Shown here: in pieces, positions 9,042 to 15,632 of the stretch | How positions within the stretch are numbered: position 1 is the stretch's first letter | How the letters are laid out: every line of letters begins with the position of its first letter | From: Entomortierella parvispora E1425 | Lineage: Eukaryota > Fungi > Mortierellomycota | Assembly (NCBI GenBank): GCA_020891255.1 | Contig: BQFW01000008.1 | Coordinates: 1,364,001-1,428,000 of the forward strand | Length of the DNA: 64,000 bases | Reading direction: 5' to 3' | Program-made: the position numbers and the translations under genes | Notes under the pieces: model-generated | Databases searched by the model: none | The model's input: only the letters and a program-made list of their open reading frames with translations | What the model was told of the DNA's origin: nothing

Positions 9042-12000
9042 CTATCCATCTGAGAGGCCAAGTGCACGACGCGGAGAAAGTGCCAAAGGGGAGGCCATCG
9101 TAGGCGTCGTAGCCGATGATGGCTGTGAAGAGGAAGGTGCTGGTGATTGTAACATCGAAGCAGCACTAGCAGACATTCGCTTTCCATTGCTACTGTTCGC
9201 TGGCGACATGTTCACACGGTCATTGTACATCCGGGTCGCCATGTGGCCCGCTCCTTTTCCCGACACATCCCCGGCATGGTTCGGATACATAGAGCTGGCA
9301 CTGCTGCTGCTCAAATAATCCTCACCGACGCTCTCCTTCCGAGATCGGTTCCCTCCAAGCCTAAAGTAGCTTCCAGATGTGGATGCCTGGGACCCAGTCC
9401 ATGACCTGTTCTCCTGGATGGAGGGGGATGTCGCGTTGCTGGGTGGTAATATCTGCGACAAGGCTGGACTGTTGGCCATAGCGGCCGCAAGGGCTTCTGT
9501 CTCGGACCACCCTGCAGAAACTGCTGCCGCTGCTGCCGAGATCACGGCGGCTGATGGAATAGTAGCGTTGCCGCTTATTGACAGATTCGTGTTCAGTCGA
9601 CTTGGTTTCTTTCGGCGACGTCTTCTCCTTTGACCACCTCCTATTCCAAACTCCGGATCATAGAGATCATCATCGTCATCGTCATTGTCGACATCGACTG
9701 TCATCATCGAGCTTCTGTTGGACGTGAGGTTGGGTCGTGGAGGGTCTGAAGGGGTTGGATCGACTGGCGATGGCTTGCCCGGCGTCCGATTCGACTTTGG
9801 CGCCGCCAAAGATGCAGTTTCTGACTGGATGGCTTTCGTGGTGCCAGCGCCGTCGGGGCGGATACTGTTCTCTTGACTCTCTTGACTTTGGATGGTAGTG
9901 GATGGCTGCTGCTGGTCTTTGAGAGCATCTTCTCCCTGATTAGGATTAGATACAGAGATGTCGTCCGCACTGATGTCTGCCAAAGGGGCCGAGGGATGAA
10001 TCGCTGCTAACTCGGAAGACTTTGGCACACTCAAACTTGCGATGGGAGCGATTTCAGGCGCCAACGCGTTCGCGATGCCGTTACTCTTTTGCTCAAGAGG
10101 CGACTCTCGTTCCGCTTCCTTGTCCTCCATCACATCTTCGCTCCTGCCCATCTCAATGAAAGGCGCTTGGTTCTTTAAGCTCTTCCTGTGGAAGTAGCTG
10201 TTGCTGTTCTCTCGGCGATTAGCAATGAACTGTTGTCCTGTGGGTATATAATTTGACGCGTTGCTATCCGTACTCGTCCACTCGATTCCGGGGCGGGCCC
10301 ATCGAGCTGCTCCATTGGCTACATCTTCATAAAACTCCCCATTGGATCCAACTTGATGGGGGTGGGCGCCATATTGATCAATTGAAGATGGAGGGAACTG
10401 GTTGTAGTTCTGGTTAAAAGTGTTGTTGGCCGCGTACACAGACTGGCTGCTGGCCCCACTTGTCGACTTTACAGAGTCCGTTCTGTGCCAAAGCCGTGAT
10501 AAACTGTTGGAAATACTCAGTCGGGAAGTCCAAGATGATGGCGCTGGTGGGGCCACGCATGGGTCCGAATAAGGAGGTCCACCTAAACCTGGAATGCCCA
10601 CGTTGGCCATCTCTGGTGAGATGACCATGGAGCGCATGTTGGTGATTGGTTGACTCATAAAGTCCGGAACACCATCCACGTTGGCAGATCTACGGCGCAT
10701 CACTGCACCGCCACTGAGCCCACCCCCGCCAGTAGGACATCCAGAAGCGTGGGGCGGGGTTGAGTTCGTTGAGGAAGTGGATGCAGATCTGGCCGATAGT
10801 GCTTGGAGATCCTCTTCTGAAAACAAACTCATCCAACTGTCTAATCGATATTGGCTGGAGAACCGAATCAGTAAAGTTCCTGCGTGACAGGTGGTGACCC
10901 TTATAGTCGGGTCTGGCTCATTCTGAAGCTGGTACATCGACAACATCAGATAGCTGGTAGATCGTCCATCGGTGCTCTTTTGAATGTTTAATTACACAGA
11001 AAGGAGGAGAAAGAGAGAGTTAATCCTCGATTCAAACGCATTGCAACAGACAAGAATGATGTAGGGGGGTTTTAACACGTGTCATCCAACTTACGTCTAC
11101 AGAAAGAAACGCGTGTGCCTCTGGCATCAGGATCAATGTCGCCATGGACCAGTGGGAGAGAAGACTAGCAATTCGGCTCTTGTGAACGCGAATTGGGAGC
11201 AAAAACTATTTGTTTTGAGAAATTTTGTTAGACCAGAGAAGCCAATAGCCTCTATGCTACAATTCCAGGACACAGTTCTTCACTTACCACATAAGCATCG
11301 AGCTAATGAAATTATAGAAAACGTAAACACAGGACATCCAGGTGTTAGAGTCATTGCTCTGTCAGCGCTCTCAGAAGAAAGGAAGGTCCAGCACAACTCA
11401 CCATTCTATGTGCACCAGAGGACGAACTGCCGAAAGTTCTCTCCGCCTGCAATCCACTTCGCAAAGGCTCTTCCTTTTCTTCTCCTTCACCTCCTGCTCC
11501 GGCATCTGTGGCATCTTGCTCATGTCTACCAAGTCTCTGAACCTGGTGTTCATTTTCATCCTCAAACAGCGGTGCCTGTATGGCGGTGTCCAAGGCCCCA
11601 GACCATTTCCTTCGACCAAAGCCTAAGCCGACCCCATCATCCAAGGGTAGGGACTCTGAGGAAAAAGTATCCGCGTGTATTGTCCTGGCTGTCGATGCAT
11701 TACCCTTTTGTGGGATCCGTGCGTTCATCCAAGCTCCTAGCGGGTTTCTTTCAATCTTGGTAATCATACCATTAGATGTGGTGGTGGACTCGGCTGTAGA
11801 TGATCGTTTCCTAGCACCACTAAACACCGGATCCAAGACTTTTTCTGCCGTGATTGAGCTCCGCTTGCCTCCTGCCATCTCCAAATCTGAAGCCGGGATG
11901 CCTCCTCCTGCAATGGCTGGTCTTCGACTGACTTTAATATCGCCAGGCATTCGTCCCATGACTGCTGCTCCACCAAACCCGCCGCCGAGCCTTGTTTGGT

Positions 12001-15000
12001 TTTGCTGACTCGGATGGCCGTCCTCGCCCCAAGGTTTGTGCAAGCTCTTCCAGATGCCCCAGAACTTTGGCAAAAAGAGGACGATCAAAGAGAGCGCAGC
12101 GATAAAAAGTGTGCCCACGATTGAAATGTAGAAAGTGGCCAGGTAAAGATCCAAAGGAAAAGCCTGAGCGACAACGATGATGATGGCAAAGAAGAATACG
12201 TTGCTAGATTTGGAAAAAAAAATGAAAGCCCGGTCAGTCATTTTTGAAGAAGTTATAGCTTGAGCCCAATGGGCAATATGTCAAAGGACGACATGCTCTT
12301 ACTATAGCACGAGTGAAATCTGTCGCGCCTCATTCCAAAGAAAGACAACGTTTCTTGTCTTGAAGGCCAGGAATACACCAAAAAGAATCAACAGCGCGGG
12401 GATGATCGCAGCGGAGATCACCCACCAGACCTGAGTGTGAATTCCACGACAGCGGACCCATTGAAAAGCTCTAATGTTGATCATGTTGGGTTCGGGAGCA
12501 TCCACTATCATTTCGACCACCATTGGTATTGCTCCGAGAAAGACTCCAAGGGCAACATATCGGAGCAACAATCGAGTTTGAAACGCCTGATTGGAGACTG
12601 TGACGGAATTGAAGATTCGGTAAATACGGTAGTTCTTGACCGTCAGCGACCTAAAATATTATATACGATAGTATTAGCGAGAAAACGATTGGTCCCAAAG
12701 ATCAGTTGTAGGAGCGCGATGAGAGGCAGTTTACCCAGCGAGCAGCGTTACACCTATTGGGAGAATAAACGTCTGGGCGATGCAGATAGCTCGGTTTGGG
12801 ATGCCAATATGGAGTGCGCACCATATGAATACCAGCAAAATGCCAAACAGTTCACAAATGCAAAAGGTTGGACTTTGTGCAAGTAGACATAGAAGAAATG
12901 TTTGTTAGAGGACATTGCATCAGAATGTTTGTTAAAGCCATTGCATCAGTGACACAATTTCCAAGTCGAAACGCATATCTTTACCTTGAAGCCTTGATGA
13001 TGATATGGTTCCTGAAATAAATCACCAGCTCAGCGGAAATCAAGGTAGCAGCGATGCCTAAGCAACACAAGATTCCATAGATGACGCCACCCGCCCCCTT
13101 CCACCGAGGATTTTGGACTATCATGGAGGGATGGTCGAATGAGTACCGTCAGGTGTTTACGCTGGAAGTTTAAAACATCAGATCTCCTTCCTTTTTGTAC
13201 TTACTAGCCCAAGGTGGAGCGTCTTTTGGGATGTCTGGATGGGAATCCTTGAAGAATGGCTTTCTGATAGACGTGAAATTTCCAGAAAAGATGATGCCAA
13301 AATGTACAGGCTTTCCATCTCTCAGACTAAGAGCGACATAGTATCTAAAGAGTGTTGAACAATGAGAAGGTCAGGCTAAGGGGTAAAAAAAGTCGGAAGA
13401 CATCGTGTGAGGATTCTGTATGAGAAAGTAGTTACCCTTCTTTTCGATCGCCGTTTCCATCCAGGGTAATTGGGCCGGCTGGCCCCCTATACGGCTTGTC
13501 TCTAAAGGTTTCAGAGACAAGAACATCCTCTGTATGGTCGCCGGCTATGAGCTCTTGGATGAGGGGGCTATGAGGGATTTGAGTAGGGTCTGTGATAACC
13601 TCGTTGATAAGATCCGCATATGCATGCGCCAACATCATCACACAAGAATAGGCCATGCTTTCGTTGTTATCAACAGTGGGGTCTCCTGCTCCCGGGTACC
13701 TACGAAAAGTCAGAGCGGGAATATAGTTAGGACTGAGCTGTCAACAACCAAAAAAGCACCGAGTCGACTGATACACCCACTTACTCATCTGGGTTAAGCG
13801 TGAGCCATTTCTCTAGGAAGGCTTCGTACGGCTCGTACCCGTTCATCTCCCAGCCGTTGTCAACCATCATTAAACCATCAAAGTCCTGGACATCGGATTC
13901 CATACGAAGCTGAGATGAAATGTCGTTGACAGTAATCCAAGCGTAGTCGGCTGAAAACAATCCGAAAAGTCTAATATTCAATGACACCATTAGTCACGAT
14001 TCAAATAAAGTGGGGGTGGAGTTCAGGGCCACTTCAACTTGCCTCATCTGCTGCAACAGTTCATGCTGTTTTTTTCCAGTCGCGATGAGCACCTGAATAC
14101 GAGATTGAGAGGACTCGATTCGATCTCGGACAAACTTGTATGTGGGATCGAAAGGAACTCCTGCCGTCGAAAGGGGCTGGTATGCAAGAATGAAAATCCC
14201 CATCTTGGAAGCACGCGCTGAAAAGTACTCACGGCCTAGAGCAGTAACCAAAATGGCATGAGCGTGTTATGTTTCTTAGAAATACTGAATGGGTCCTCAA
14301 AGAGAGCTTTGTGCGCATGATCTCCCGAGGTCCTCTTACCTGCCCATCCCAATGTGTCAATGTCGTAGATCAGGGAAATTCGCTTCCAGCCCATGCTTCG
14401 GACAACATCAAGCATGGCGTCCAGAAGAATGATTGTGGTGGGGATGGTACGAAAAAAATATGGATACGTTCGTGAGTCGGAGAGAATCGTGTTTGCTAGT
14501 GGATAAGAGGACAAGATGTTTTTTGGGAGTCAGAGACAAAGAATACACTCGGCCTGCATTGAGCCATTTGATAGCATGGAATATGACTTGCCTGATGCAA
14601 ACGAGCACTGCGAAATTTGCACGCTGGAAGTCATCAGCGCCTCATAACGTGTTAGATCTGACCGGATATCTCCAATGACGCCGCTAACCTTTGTCGGAAG
14701 AAATGTGGCACAAGAGACGCAAGAGTCCATAGTTGGTTAGGATCTGCGTGCACTTGATCCGTGCAGTTAGAGAGGAAGCAGAGTGCCATAGTTGATTCAC
14801 AGACCTTTGCGCTGATCAGCTGTCCGGCCCCACTGATGGCTGCCGATCCTCCTGAGGACGAATACAAGCTAGGATCCTGGCTGTCACGAAGAATGATCGA
14901 CATATTCAATCCTGGGATAATCTGGTTCTCATTCACATCGTTTATGGCCATCCGGATCACCGACAGCGATTTCCGAACCATTGTTGCCTCTCTTTCCGTT

Positions 15001-15632
15001 GGCCCTGCATTCAAGTTCAGGAGCACACCCAGGCGCAGTGTCTCCATGTTTGGATCCCACATTGTTTCGTACTCGAAGTCTGTTAAAAGCCGTGGTTTGG
15101 TCGGTGGGCGTGGCAACTCTGTGGCCATGGGAGGCATGTAGGGTTGTGTCCTGGTATAGGAAAACGATGATGTTTCTTCAGTGCTGGAGATCTCAGTCGT
15201 GCTTGCAACATTGCTAGTTGGCAGGCCTGTCTGAGTTGGGGCAGGACCGGCCGTCTCTGTTGACCACGGTGGGAGCTGCCTTCTTTCATGTCGTTGCTTT
15301 GCAATCAATGTTGGTGCAGACCAAGAAGAACCCCTTTCGTTGCGCCGAGAATCACCCAATAAGGGTTGGCTATTACCGAGGAGAATATGATCAGTGGGGC
15401 GAGCAGCACCTGTGAAGCGAGAGGTTGAGGTGGGGTGAAGGGAGTTTGAGGCAACGGAAATGGCGACAATGACTTCGAGACAGGTCATGGTGACCGCCAG
15501 ACAACCCACATTGGGCCAGTGCCTCTTTTTAGTCCTGTGGCGCGTTGGAAGGCGCATAGGTGGATGGCCTTTGAAGAGTCGGAAGGTATGTGAAGATACA
15601 GGTGCTGGATCAACCGTAACGGGCAGCAGCAT
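9042..15632 (-). CDS. Class C (GABA-B-like) GPCR: Venus-flytrap/ANF ectodomain, 7tm_3 domain and a very long cytoplasmic tail; about 14 exons, about 1780 aa
   Basis: N-terminal hydrophobic segment; LRLGVLL...IRMAINDVN...VSGVIGDIRS...QCSFAS|ANTILSDSRTYPYFFRT (ANF receptor pattern); TM1 followed by FRNHIIIKASSPTF; GSLTVKNYRIYRIFN; GVFLAFKTRNV...WNEARQI (7tm_3 hallmarks). Exons 11402-12203, 11288-11302, 11095-11205 and 9042-10976 join in frame. The start codon is uncertain. Confidence 0.88.

What the first reader, a model, noticed from the sequence alone, without database searches (positions are those of the whole stretch)
9042..15632. Class C GPCR whose cytoplasmic tail carries a hidden PH-like domain
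Seen in sequence: five apparently separate minus-strand ORF groups splice in frame into one receptor (flytrap ectodomain with no cysteine-rich linker, as in GABA-B; 7tm_3; tail of about 900 aa). Inside an otherwise low-complexity tail, three exons (11288-11302, 11095-11205, and 10976 down to about 10820) give an ordered segment of about 100 aa: LDAYVFLLPIRVHKSRIASLLSHWSMATLILMPEAHAFLSVDSTDGRSTSYLMLSMYQLQNEPDPTIRVTTCHAGTLLIRFSSQYRLDSWMSLF. It has about 7 short beta-strand-like runs, a W before strand 2, and a terminal helix with the PH-typical W. Established: class C GPCRs are reported mainly from early-diverging fungi rather than Dikarya, and animal class C receptors have no PH domain. Inference: a receptor with a built-in lipid- or protein-docking module (for example phosphoinositide or G-beta-gamma binding), an architecture I do not know to be described.
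Basis: partly seen in the sequence, partly recalled or inferred. Interest (0 to 1): 0.72.

Follow-up and report, generated by a model that had tools for sequence, protein, structure and literature searches.

The report
Fungal class C GPCR with PH-fold tail domain
A soil fungus (family Mortierellaceae) encodes a glutamate/GABA-B-type receptor whose long inner tail holds a small, well-folded pleckstrin-homology (PH) type docking domain; this layout is shared by all five such receptors in the genome, and I found no paper describing it.

Summary
Minus-strand 15632-9042 is one 14-exon gene of about 1781 aa: ANF_receptor flytrap, a cysteine-free linker, 7tm_3, and a tail of about 900 aa. All three introns are phase 0.

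- **Coding evidence:** a related metagenome contig keeps these exons at 86-87% identity, with 36 of 44 changes at third codon positions. The introns between them are only 50-63% identical.
- **One gene:** four full-length annotated orthologues align colinearly with the window.
- **Fold:** AlphaFold2 on the closest orthologue domain (86% and 79% identical to the window exons) gives five confident models. Structural searches return only PH-superfold domains (Z up to 10.5).
- **Sequence level:** Pfam PH does not match, so "hidden" is a fair description.
- **Distribution:** a profile search of 1.84 billion proteins finds the domain only behind 7tm_3, in Mortierellaceae and in Calcarisporiella. All five class C receptor genes of this genome carry it. 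In two of them TM7 and the first PH strands share one exon.

No RNA run was listed, so splicing is inferred. The function is unknown, and this copy lacks the canonical phosphoinositide motif. Other first readers of this scan noted the same layout elsewhere in this genome.

The parts
14805..15632 (-). Exon 1: N-terminus with a hydrophobic signal/anchor stretch and the start of the flytrap. The start codon at 15632 is assumed.
   Evidence: ORF 14652..15632. Orthologues align from about 15149. Donor at 14804, junction ...LISAK|VSGVIG.
14592..14688 (-). Exon 2 (flytrap). It is followed by a GC-AG intron (GCAAGT donor at 14591).
   Evidence: The junction reading ...CSFAS-A-NTILSD fits the ANF_receptor pattern. 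The GC donor is inferred.
14340..14495 (-). Exon 3 (flytrap, best ANF_receptor match).
   Evidence: Pfam ANF_receptor E 2.9e-10, 40.2 bits against a cut-off of 25.4. Donor GTAAGA at 14339.
14043..14235 (-). Exon 4 (flytrap). It is followed by a 72-nt GC-AG intron (donor 14042).
   Evidence: An in-frame stop at 13994-13996 between two same-frame ORFs requires an intron here. Sequence read.
13785..13970 (-). Exon 5 (flytrap).
   Evidence: Donor GTAAGT at 13784.
13436..13699 (-). Exon 6 (end of the flytrap).
   Evidence: The junction ...NPDE|YPGAGD matches the orthologues.
13205..13344 (-). Exon 7: 46-aa linker between flytrap and TM1, with no cysteine and so no nine-cysteine domain.
   Evidence: No NCD3G hit in any full-length orthologue.
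12985..13117 (-). Exon 8 (TM1).
   Evidence: 7tm_3 model positions 3-41, E 2e-4. Sequence read.
12735..12872 (-). Exon 9 (TM2-3).
   Evidence: Orthologue alignment.
12303..12650 (-). Exon 10 (TM3-6).
   Evidence: 7tm_3 model positions 119-202, E 1.5e-7. Donor GTAAGA at 12302.
11402..12203 (-). Exon 11: TM6-7 (TM7 about 12133-12050) plus 216 aa of low-complexity proximal tail, including the conserved NPLGAWMN motif at 11746-11723.
   Evidence: One open frame with no stop. Donor GTGAGT at 11401.
11288..11302 (-). Exon 12: 15-nt microexon encoding LDAYV, the start of PH strand 1.
   Evidence: Splice sites. In the relative L003 both nucleotide changes are synonymous, while the flanking introns are 50-52% identical. 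The equivalent residues are present in orthologues.
11095..11205 (-). Exon 13: PH strands 1-3 (37 aa).
   Evidence: Profile match E 1.3e-17. 86% identical to P0020. Against L003, 13 of 14 changes are at codon position 3 and 1 of 37 aa differs.
9042..10976 (-). Exon 14: the rest of the PH domain plus 592 aa of distal tail. Stop codon at 9042-9044.
   Evidence: A single 644-codon open frame. 70% identical to metagenome ORF P0001.
10790..10976 (-). PH strands 4-7 and the C-terminal helices. The conserved Trp of WMSLF lies at 10835-10821.
   Evidence: Profile match E 1.1e-32. The AF2 secondary structure of the orthologue places the Trp in the helix.
9612..9665 (-). Conserved distal tail motif: an acidic run, then LYDPEFGIG, then an Arg run.
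   Evidence: Invariant in 13 of 13 group A orthologues; absent from group B and Calcarisporiella. Coordinates.
9474..9560 (-). Conserved Ala-rich element (IPSAAVIS...GWSE...ALAAAM), probably a helix.
   Evidence: Found by regular expression in 9 of 13 group A orthologues and aligned by tblastn. Its structure was not predicted.

Best explanation
Window 15632-9042 (minus strand) is a single 14-exon gene of a Mortierellaceae fungus. It encodes a class C (glutamate/GABA-B-type) G-protein-coupled receptor with these parts:
- a Venus-flytrap ectodomain (ANF_receptor);
- a short cysteine-free linker;
- 7tm_3;
- a mostly disordered cytoplasmic tail of about 900 aa.

About 216 aa after TM7 the tail holds a compact 95-aa domain with the PH (pleckstrin homology) fold. 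It has seven strands in a sandwich, capped by a helix that carries the conserved Trp. A 15-nt microexon and two further exons encode it.

The domain is an old, family-wide part of these fungal receptors. All five class C receptor genes of this genome carry it. So do many Mortierellaceae orthologues in three subgroups, and so does Calcarisporiella thermophila. One intron sits at the same place and phase throughout.

Inferred mechanism (not shown): the domain is a receptor-tethered docking module. It would hold a signalling partner, or a part of the receptor's own tail, near the membrane face of the receptor. In this copy (group A) the partner is more likely a protein or peptide than a specific phosphoinositide. 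The domain is about neutral and has Ser-Met-Ala where canonical lipid-binding PH domains have (K/R)-x-R at the start of strand 2. The basic strand 1-2 loop (R-V-H-K-S-R) could still give weak contact with acidic membranes.

The confidence of 0.75 applies to the identity and architecture. I would put the docking mechanism alone at about 0.35.
For: **Gene and family**
- ANF_receptor and 7tm_3 hits fall on the window's exons.
- Full-length orthologues P0020, P0022, P0046 and P0049 (1556-1781 aa) carry ANF_receptor, 7tm_3 and the domain. They align colinearly with the window from about 15119 to 9186.
- The splice sites and phases are consistent across the gene, and the exons sum to 5346 nt, a multiple of 3.

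**Coding selection on the PH exons**
- Against L003 the exons are 86-87% identical, with 36 of 44 differences at codon position 3 and 3 of 107 aa changed.
- The introns are 50-63% identical and contain indels.

**Fold**
- AF2 run 1 reached pLDDT 84.5 in its best model.
- AF2 run 2, with 27 sequences, gave five models at 84.3-87.7 and pTM 0.76.
- Foldseek against the PDB: all top-50 hits to model 1 are PH-superfold; for model 2, 48 of 50 are (the two others are SsgA/SsgB). Best E 8.5e-4.
- VIA-align gives Z 10.2-10.5, with 54-65 chains at Z >= 8.
- The ESM Atlas's own model of the Calcarisporiella domain matches PH domains at TM 0.63-0.75.

**Linkage to the receptor**
- The profile search of 1.84e9 proteins gave 37 hits. 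Every hit long enough to include the receptor body is ANF_receptor + 7tm_3.
- In Calcarisporiella one exon encodes aa 568-830, which covers the TM helices, the linker and PH strands 1-3.
- In paralogues L015 and L016 of this genome, TM7 and PH strands 1-3 share one open frame.
- The shared intron follows strand 3.

**Against a canonical lipid site**
- Net charge of the domain is -1 to +2 in most group A copies, ranging from -4 to +5.
- Strand 2 starts W-S-M-A.
Against: - No RNA data: no run was listed, so the three tail junctions and the microexon rest on comparative evidence.
- The fold was predicted for orthologue domains (P0005, P0020), not for the window's own spliced peptide, which has no single reference.
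- Sequence methods do not place the domain in PH. Pfam gives nothing at E <= 10. The PDB sequence search gives nothing relevant. hhalign against four canonical PH domains of this genome gives only P 0.044 and 0.0078, over the last two strands and the helix.
- Several NCBI models split the tail off as its own protein (P0005, P0007, P0014-16, P0026).
- Nothing here tests binding. The charge and motif argument is by sequence register only.
Confidence: 0.75

Rival explanations
1. The PH-fold domain is a phosphoinositide sensor. It would pin the tail to PI(4,5)P2- or PI3P-rich membrane and so control receptor localisation or gating. This is one of the ligands the reader proposed.
For: Many of the top structural matches are lipid-binding PH domains, including ArhGAP9, TAPP1, Akt, Grp1 and Btk. 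The strand 1-2 loop keeps R-x-x-(K/R)-x-(R/W). Paralogue groups B and C keep one or two basic residues at the start of strand 2, as W-R-M-S-K and W-x-M-(R/K)-R.
Against: Group A, which includes this gene, has W-S-M-A-T at the start of strand 2, and its net charge is about zero. From general knowledge, most PH domains do not bind phosphoinositides specifically. No binding test was possible.
Confidence: 0.25
2. The tail is a separate gene. The receptor would end near 11351 by reading into the intron, and the PH-bearing protein would be a soluble partner encoded next to it.
For: If the intron at 11401 is retained, the frame stops at 11351. Six NCBI orthologue models are tail-only. No RNA evidence is available.
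Against: Two tail-only models start inside TM7 (P0014, P0026), and P0016 starts at an internal Met just before the conserved NPxxxWM motif that the window encodes in the TM7 exon. These look like prediction artefacts. Twelve or more full-length models join the two parts. TM7 and PH strands 1-3 lie in one exon in Calcarisporiella and in two paralogues of this genome. The profile finds the domain in no protein family other than these receptors.
Confidence: 0.05
3. The domain is mainly a structural or dimerisation element of the tail, comparable in role to the GABA-B coiled coil, with no outside ligand.
For: Class C receptors act as dimers (established knowledge). Group A tails carry further invariant motifs, LYDPEFGIG and the Ala-rich helix, which could pack on the domain.
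Against: Group B, group C and Calcarisporiella keep the domain without those motifs. Nothing here tests self-association.
Confidence: 0.15

Closest known systems
GABA-B-type class C GPCRs (ANF_receptor + 7tm_3 without the nine-cysteine domain), including the fungal Glutamate-family receptors described by Krishnan et al. 2012 (PMC3251606)
   Same: Flytrap ectodomain, no cysteine-rich linker, 7tm_3 core, long cytoplasmic tail. Occurs in early-diverging fungi rather than Dikarya.
   Different: Animal class C receptors have no PH-fold domain in the tail (general knowledge). The fungal surveys I read discuss N-terminal domains only and mention no PH domain.
PH domain of GRK2 (binds G-beta-gamma and PIP2 next to an active receptor)
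   Same: PH fold. GRK2 chains are among the Foldseek matches. Both work at the cytoplasmic face of a GPCR.
   Different: In GRK2 the PH domain sits on a soluble kinase, whereas here it is part of the receptor chain. No sequence similarity was found and G-beta-gamma binding was not tested.
GPCRs fused to cytoplasmic signalling domains: RpkA/GPCR-PIPK (cAMP-receptor 7TM + PIP5K; named in PMC3971589), and 7TM-RGS proteins such as AtRGS1 and fungal GprK (general knowledge)
   Same: A 7TM receptor with a folded signalling module in its C-terminal tail.
   Different: The 7TM class differs, since none of these is class C. The fused module also differs: those carry enzymes or a GAP, this carries a non-catalytic PH fold.
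Split PH domains (for example PLC-gamma, syntrophin, Vps36; general knowledge)
   Same: Paralogue group B carries the same domain interrupted by an insert of roughly 100-250 aa after strand 4.
   Different: The gene in this window has the uninterrupted form.

Membership tests
Class C GPCR (Pfam 7tm_3, PF00003) | 7tm_3 profile match over the seven helices | tested here: met
   The window exons match at E 1.5e-7 and 2e-4, each below the cut-off only because the domain is split by introns. The genome search gives 38.9 bits over the cut-off at this locus. Colinear orthologues score 73-132 bits.
Class C GPCR (flytrap type) | ANF_receptor / periplasmic-binding-protein ectodomain N-terminal to the 7TM | tested here: met
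   ANF_receptor scores 40.2 bits against a cut-off of 25.4 on exon 3. Orthologues score up to 144.7 bits.
GABA-B-like subgroup | No nine-cysteine (NCD3G) domain between flytrap and TM1 | tested here: met
   The 46-aa linker exon has 0 Cys. No NCD3G hit at E <= 0.01 in 20 orthologues or paralogues. Phylogenetic placement with GABA-B was not tested.
PH domain (Pfam PF00169) | Match to the sequence profile | tested here: not met
   No PH-clan family at E <= 10 for any of 11 members. hhalign against canonical PH domains of this genome gives P 0.044 and 0.0078, over 30-31 columns only.
PH-like superfold | Seven-stranded bent sandwich capped at one end by a C-terminal helix | tested here: met
   AF2 gives strands at 17-26, 38-45, 50-55, 61-72, 79-84 and 88-93 and a helix at 97-104, with five models at pLDDT 84-88. 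VIA gives Z 10.5, 10.4, 10.4 and 10.3 to the Bem3, spectrin, ArhGAP27 and ArhGAP9 PH domains. Foldseek's top 50 are all PH-superfold for model 1, and 48 of 50 for model 2. Tested on orthologue domains 75-86% identical to the window's.
PH-like superfold | Conserved Trp in the C-terminal helix | tested here: met
   The Trp of W-M-x-L-F is nearly invariant, lies in helix 97-104, and aligns with the canonical PH Trp.
Phosphoinositide-binding PH domains | Basic motif K-Xn-(K/R)-X-R across strands 1-2 | tested here: inconclusive
   By sequence and predicted strand register, group A has R-x-x-K-x-R in the loop but S-M-A at the start of strand 2. Net charge is about 0 in most group A copies. No structural superposition or binding assay was possible.
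G-beta-gamma-binding PH (GRK2 type) | Binding of G-beta-gamma through the C-terminal helix region | not testable with these tools
   Only fold-level similarity is available.

The most novel reading that the evidence does not exclude
A PH-fold domain directly behind TM7 is an ancestral hallmark of a whole clade of fungal class C GPCRs. The clade covers Mortierellomycota and Calcarisporiella, and possibly chytrids, where an ESM Atlas cluster of 7tm_3 + PBP_like_2 proteins gives a structural match. The domain would act as a built-in transducer dock, for example for G-beta-gamma, G-alpha or a small GTPase. These receptors would then be pre-coupled or would signal by a route that animal class C receptors do not use.
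Probability: 0.25. Interest if true: 0.8.

Novelty: new variant of a known kind. Interest (0 to 1): 0.6.

Why it matters
Class C receptors are among the best-studied GPCRs, and their tails are usually seen as disordered strings of short motifs that bind outside adaptors such as Homer (itself a PH-superfold EVH1 domain), GRKs and arrestins. Here the receptor carries a folded PH-type module of its own. The module is kept under purifying selection in every paralogue of the genome and across at least two fungal lineages, with a shared intron.

That gives a concrete, testable handle on how GPCR signalling is wired in early-diverging fungi, where almost nothing is known experimentally. It also adds a new entry to the short list of GPCRs with built-in cytoplasmic signalling domains.

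There is a practical point for annotation as well. Many public gene models of these receptors are split, truncated or lack the microexon and the first PH exon.

Tried and rejected
- **RNA evidence:** The look-up of sequencing runs listed no run, so read laying could not be used.
- **Sequence-level assignment:** Pfam on the domain members gave only chance hits such as CueP and PTS_EIIB. The PDB sequence search gave one chance hit, topoisomerase at E 1.6.
- **False positives in the profile search:** two of the 37 hits were rejected. P0042 is a bacterial PPC/WSC repeat protein and P0045 is an Ig-repeat protein; both match only as repeated beta-rich stretches.
- **Reaching beyond Calcarisporiella:** two homologous-protein searches with P0043 (regions 770-919 and 480-919) found only P0043 itself and one MMETSP receptor (P0050). 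P0050 has no such domain.
- **Zinc site:** I considered one formed by the conserved His/Cys residues of group A (SHW, EAHAF, TCH). I rejected it because those residues vary in groups B and C and in several group A members.
- **Skipping the microexon:** joining 11402 directly to 11205 would also stay in frame. I consider it unlikely to be the main form, because the five residues and both splice sites are conserved.
- **Joined protein:** the window's spliced protein was never assembled or sent to any tool. All searches were exon by exon, by reference, and the fold work used database orthologues.
Full report
**What is in the window**

On the minus strand between 15632 and 9042 lies a string of ORF pieces. 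Pfam assigns them to a class C GPCR:
- ANF_receptor on 14236-14514 (E 2.9e-10, 40.2 bits, above the 25.4 cut-off);
- 7tm_3 on 12981-13124 (model positions 3-41) and on 12302-12571 (model positions 119-202).

I read the junctions directly and scored every frame-keeping GT-AG pair between the pieces. The result is a 14-exon model:

| Exon | Coordinates |
|---|---|
| 1 | 15632-14805 |
| 2 | 14688-14592 |
| 3 | 14495-14340 |
| 4 | 14235-14043 |
| 5 | 13970-13785 |
| 6 | 13699-13436 |
| 7 | 13344-13205 |
| 8 | 13117-12985 |
| 9 | 12872-12735 |
| 10 | 12650-12303 |
| 11 | 12203-11402 |
| 12 | 11302-11288 |
| 13 | 11205-11095 |
| 14 | 10976-9042 |

The exon lengths sum to 5346 nt, which is 1781 codons plus a stop. 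Two introns seem to use GC-AG with a GCAAGT donor (14591 and 14042); this is inferred from frame and orthologue fit. The 46-aa linker exon between flytrap and TM1 has no cysteine, and no orthologue shows an NCD3G domain.

**The tail junctions**

- Exon 11 encodes TM6-7 (TM7 about 12133-12050) and 216 aa of low-complexity tail in one open frame. It ends at 11402, before a GTGAGT donor.
- A 99-nt intron leads to a 15-nt microexon (11302-11288, LDAYV).
- An 82-nt intron leads to 11205-11095 (37 aa).
- A 118-nt intron leads to 10976, from which one 644-codon frame runs to the stop at 9042-9044.
- All three introns are phase 0.

**Are the small exons real?**

No RNA run was listed for this stretch, so I used comparison instead. 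A metagenome contig from a close relative (L003, found through P0001, which is 70% identical over the distal tail) aligns across the whole region. Counting by segment:

| Segment | Identity to L003 | Differences |
|---|---|---|
| Microexon | 13 of 15 nt | both synonymous |
| Exon 13 | 87% | 13 of 14 at codon position 3; 1 of 37 aa changed |
| Start of exon 14 | 86% | 21 of 28 at position 3; 2 of 65 aa changed |
| The three introns | 50%, 52%, 63% | with indels |

All GT and AG sites are kept. This is the signature of spliced coding exons under purifying selection.

Annotated orthologues from Linnemannia, Lunasporangiospora, Podila and Mortierella contain the same five microexon residues in the same place, as L/M-D/E/A-x-F/Y-V/M.

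**One gene or two?**

Several lines of evidence point to one gene:
- Four full-length database proteins align colinearly with the window from about 15119 to 9186, across every exon including 11205-11095 and 10976 onward. They are P0020 (Linnemannia exigua, 1556 aa), P0022 and P0046 (Podila epicladia, 1686 and 1781 aa), and P0049 (Linnemannia elongata AG-77, 1654 aa).
- Some NCBI models are tail-only. Two of them begin inside TM7, and P0016 begins at an internal Met just before a conserved motif that the window encodes in the TM7 exon. I read these as prediction artefacts.
- In Calcarisporiella thermophila (P0043, 919 aa), exact mapping of the protein onto its contig shows one exon (L010:3597-4385) encoding residues 568-830. 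That stretch covers most of the 7TM, a 55-aa linker and PH strands 1-3.
- In two paralogues of this same genome (L015 on contig 1, L016 on contig 6), TM7 and PH strands 1-3 lie in one stop-free frame.

So the PH-type domain belongs physically to the receptor in this family.

**The fold**

I folded the nearest database orthologue domains instead.
- Run 1 used P0005:200-325, which is 81% and 74% identical to the two window exons, with 11 sequences. Its best model had pLDDT 84.5, but the other four were only 64-67.
- Run 2 used P0020:832-962, which is 86% and 79% identical, with 27 sequences that included paralogues and Calcarisporiella. All five models came out at 84.3-87.7, pTM 0.76.
- The topology has strands at 17-26, 38-45, 50-55, 61-72 (long and bent), 79-84 and 88-93, then a helix at 97-104 that contains the conserved Trp, then a second helix.
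- The microexon encodes the start of strand 1.

Structural searches agree:
- Foldseek against the PDB: all top-50 hits to model 1 are PH-superfold; for model 2, 48 of 50 are, the two exceptions being the bacterial cell-division proteins SsgB and SsgA. The PH-superfold hits include ORP11, evectin-2, GRK2, ArhGAP27, Btk, Grp1, Ran-binding domains, EVH1 and SSRP1. The E-values are marginal (best 8.5e-4) and TM is about 0.5-0.56.
- The Foldseek-independent VIA-align search of 48,161 chains gives Z 10.2-10.5. The top hits are Bem3 PH (rmsd 2.2 over 82 residues), beta-spectrin PH and the ArhGAP27 and ArhGAP9 PH domains. There are 54-65 chains at Z >= 8, and rank 50 is still at 8.0-8.3. That is above the stated background of 7-8 best and 4-5 at rank 50.
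- The ESM Atlas's own single-sequence model of the distant Calcarisporiella protein matches PH domains at TM 0.63-0.75 over residues 787-895.

By sequence the domain stays hidden:
- Pfam gives no PH-clan hit at E <= 10.
- The PDB sequence search gives nothing relevant.
- hhalign against four canonical PH domains taken from this genome aligns only the last two strands and the helix. The Trp is in register, at P 0.044 and 0.0078.
- The one public hint is UniRef's automatic name for the truncated orthologue P0014, 'PH domain-containing protein'.

**Distribution**

A profile of the domain searched against 1.84 billion representative proteins gave only 37 hits at E <= 0.001, of which 26 were at E <= 1e-10.
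- Two hits are false positives (P0042 and P0045).
- All the rest are Mortierellaceae proteins or fragments, plus Calcarisporiella.
- Every hit long enough to include the receptor body has ANF_receptor + 7tm_3 upstream of the domain.

Three subgroups appear:
- **Group A** (this gene and a paralogue on contig 4) has a long linker, plus invariant distal motifs: an acidic run followed by LYDPEFGIG and an Arg run, then an Ala-rich IPSAAVIS...GWSE element.
- **Group B** has the domain split by an insert of roughly 100-250 aa after strand 4.
- **Group C** (two genes in this genome, and Calcarisporiella) has a short linker and a sequence somewhat closer to canonical PH.

The genome has five 7tm_3 loci. 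With the broader profile, all five show both halves of the domain downstream, in order, on the same strand, and broken at the same point. That intron, after strand 3 and in phase 0, is shared with Calcarisporiella. This argues for one ancient fusion rather than repeated gain.

A structural search of the ESM Atlas also returned a chytrid cluster of 7tm_3 + PBP_like_2 proteins (TM 0.58, 106 residues aligned). I could not locate the match within those proteins or fetch them, so it is a lead only.

**Function**

Nothing here tests binding. What the sequence shows:
- The group A domain is about neutral, with net charge -1 to +2 in most copies (range -4 to +5).
- Its strand 1-2 loop keeps R-x-x-(K/R)-x-(R/W).
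- The start of strand 2 reads W-S-M-A-T, where canonical phosphoinositide-binding PH domains carry W-(K/R)-x-R. Compare the genome's own PH domains.
- Groups B and C keep one or two basic residues there.

I therefore favour a tethered protein- or peptide-docking role for this copy, with at most weak electrostatic membrane contact. Specific lipid sensing is kept as the main rival. This is inference.

**Literature**

- Krishnan et al. 2012 (PMC3251606) established Glutamate-family GPCRs in basal fungi and their absence from Dikarya. The paper analyses N-terminal domains only and has no occurrence of 'PH domain', 'pleckstrin' or 'C-terminal'.
- Seppala et al. 2016 (PMC5168858) and de Mendoza et al. 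2014 (PMC3971589) likewise treat N-terminal architecture.
- Full-text searches combining GPCR, class C, PH/pleckstrin and early-diverging fungi, chytrid or Mucoromycota found no description of this layout.
- Absence from this library is not proof of absence.

**Earlier notes of this scan**

Other first readers flagged 'class C GPCR with PH-like tail domain' on three other pieces of this genome (s1-199079, s1-196967, s1-201203), and a GABA-B-like receptor on a fourth (s1-193987). None had been followed up. My paralogue analysis agrees with them in substance, though I cannot map each note to a locus.

**Verdict**

One transcript is very likely but not shown by RNA. The fold is PH-type with good confidence. 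The ligand is unknown. This is a new variant of a known kind: a class C GPCR with a built-in PH-fold module that is family-wide in Mortierellaceae and shared with Calcarisporiella.

Noticed in passing
G000 contigs C1:2188 kb (L015), C6:2407 kb (L016), C4:2047 kb (L017), C1:2282 kb (L018): All five 7tm_3 genes of this genome carry a PH-like domain after TM7, in three subtypes. In L015 and L016, TM7 and PH strands 1-3 are in one exon, and the sequence there is closer to canonical PH (G-Y-M-G-V-K...W-x-M-R/K-R).
   Followed up: partly
L018:4266-4391 and L018:2223-4187; proteins P0036-P0041, P0044: In paralogue group B the PH-like domain is split after strand 4 by an insert of roughly 100-250 aa. 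This is a 'split PH' arrangement inside a receptor tail.
   Followed up: partly
window 9612-9665 and 9474-9560: Two strongly conserved elements in the otherwise low-complexity distal tail. The first is an acidic run + LYDPEFGIG + Arg run, invariant in 13 of 13 group A orthologues. The second is an Ala-rich probable helix (IPSAAVIS...GWSE...ALAAAM). Both co-occur only with the group A domain. Function unknown; they may be a ligand for the PH-fold domain or a trafficking signal.
   Followed up: partly
window 11723-11746: Conserved proximal-tail motif N-P-L-G-A-W-M-N, seen as N-P-x-x-x-W-M in orthologues P0006, P0011, P0016 and P0018. It lies in the same exon as TM7.
   Followed up: no
window 14591 and 14042: Two introns of the gene appear to use GC-AG splice sites with the same G|GCAAGT donor. 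This is inferred from frame and orthologue fit, without RNA.
   Followed up: partly
L010:4385-4457 (Calcarisporiella thermophila) versus window 11094-10977: The phase-0 intron after PH strand 3 (...D|S...) sits at the same position in Calcarisporiella, in Mortierellaceae and in all paralogues here. This points to a single ancient origin of the receptor-PH fusion.
   Followed up: yes
database proteins P0005-P0016, P0026: Many public gene models of these receptors are faulty. Some tails are split off as separate proteins, some starts fall inside TM7 (P0014, P0026), and some models lack the microexon and first PH exon (P0006, P0008, P0009, P0011, P0012).
   Followed up: partly
ESM Atlas cluster (row 3): A chytrid cluster of 7tm_3 + PBP_like_2 receptors (1011 aa representative, 50 members) matches the PH-fold model structurally (TM 0.58, 106 residues). 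This hints that the layout reaches Chytridiomycota. I could not fetch the proteins or locate the match within them.
   Followed up: no
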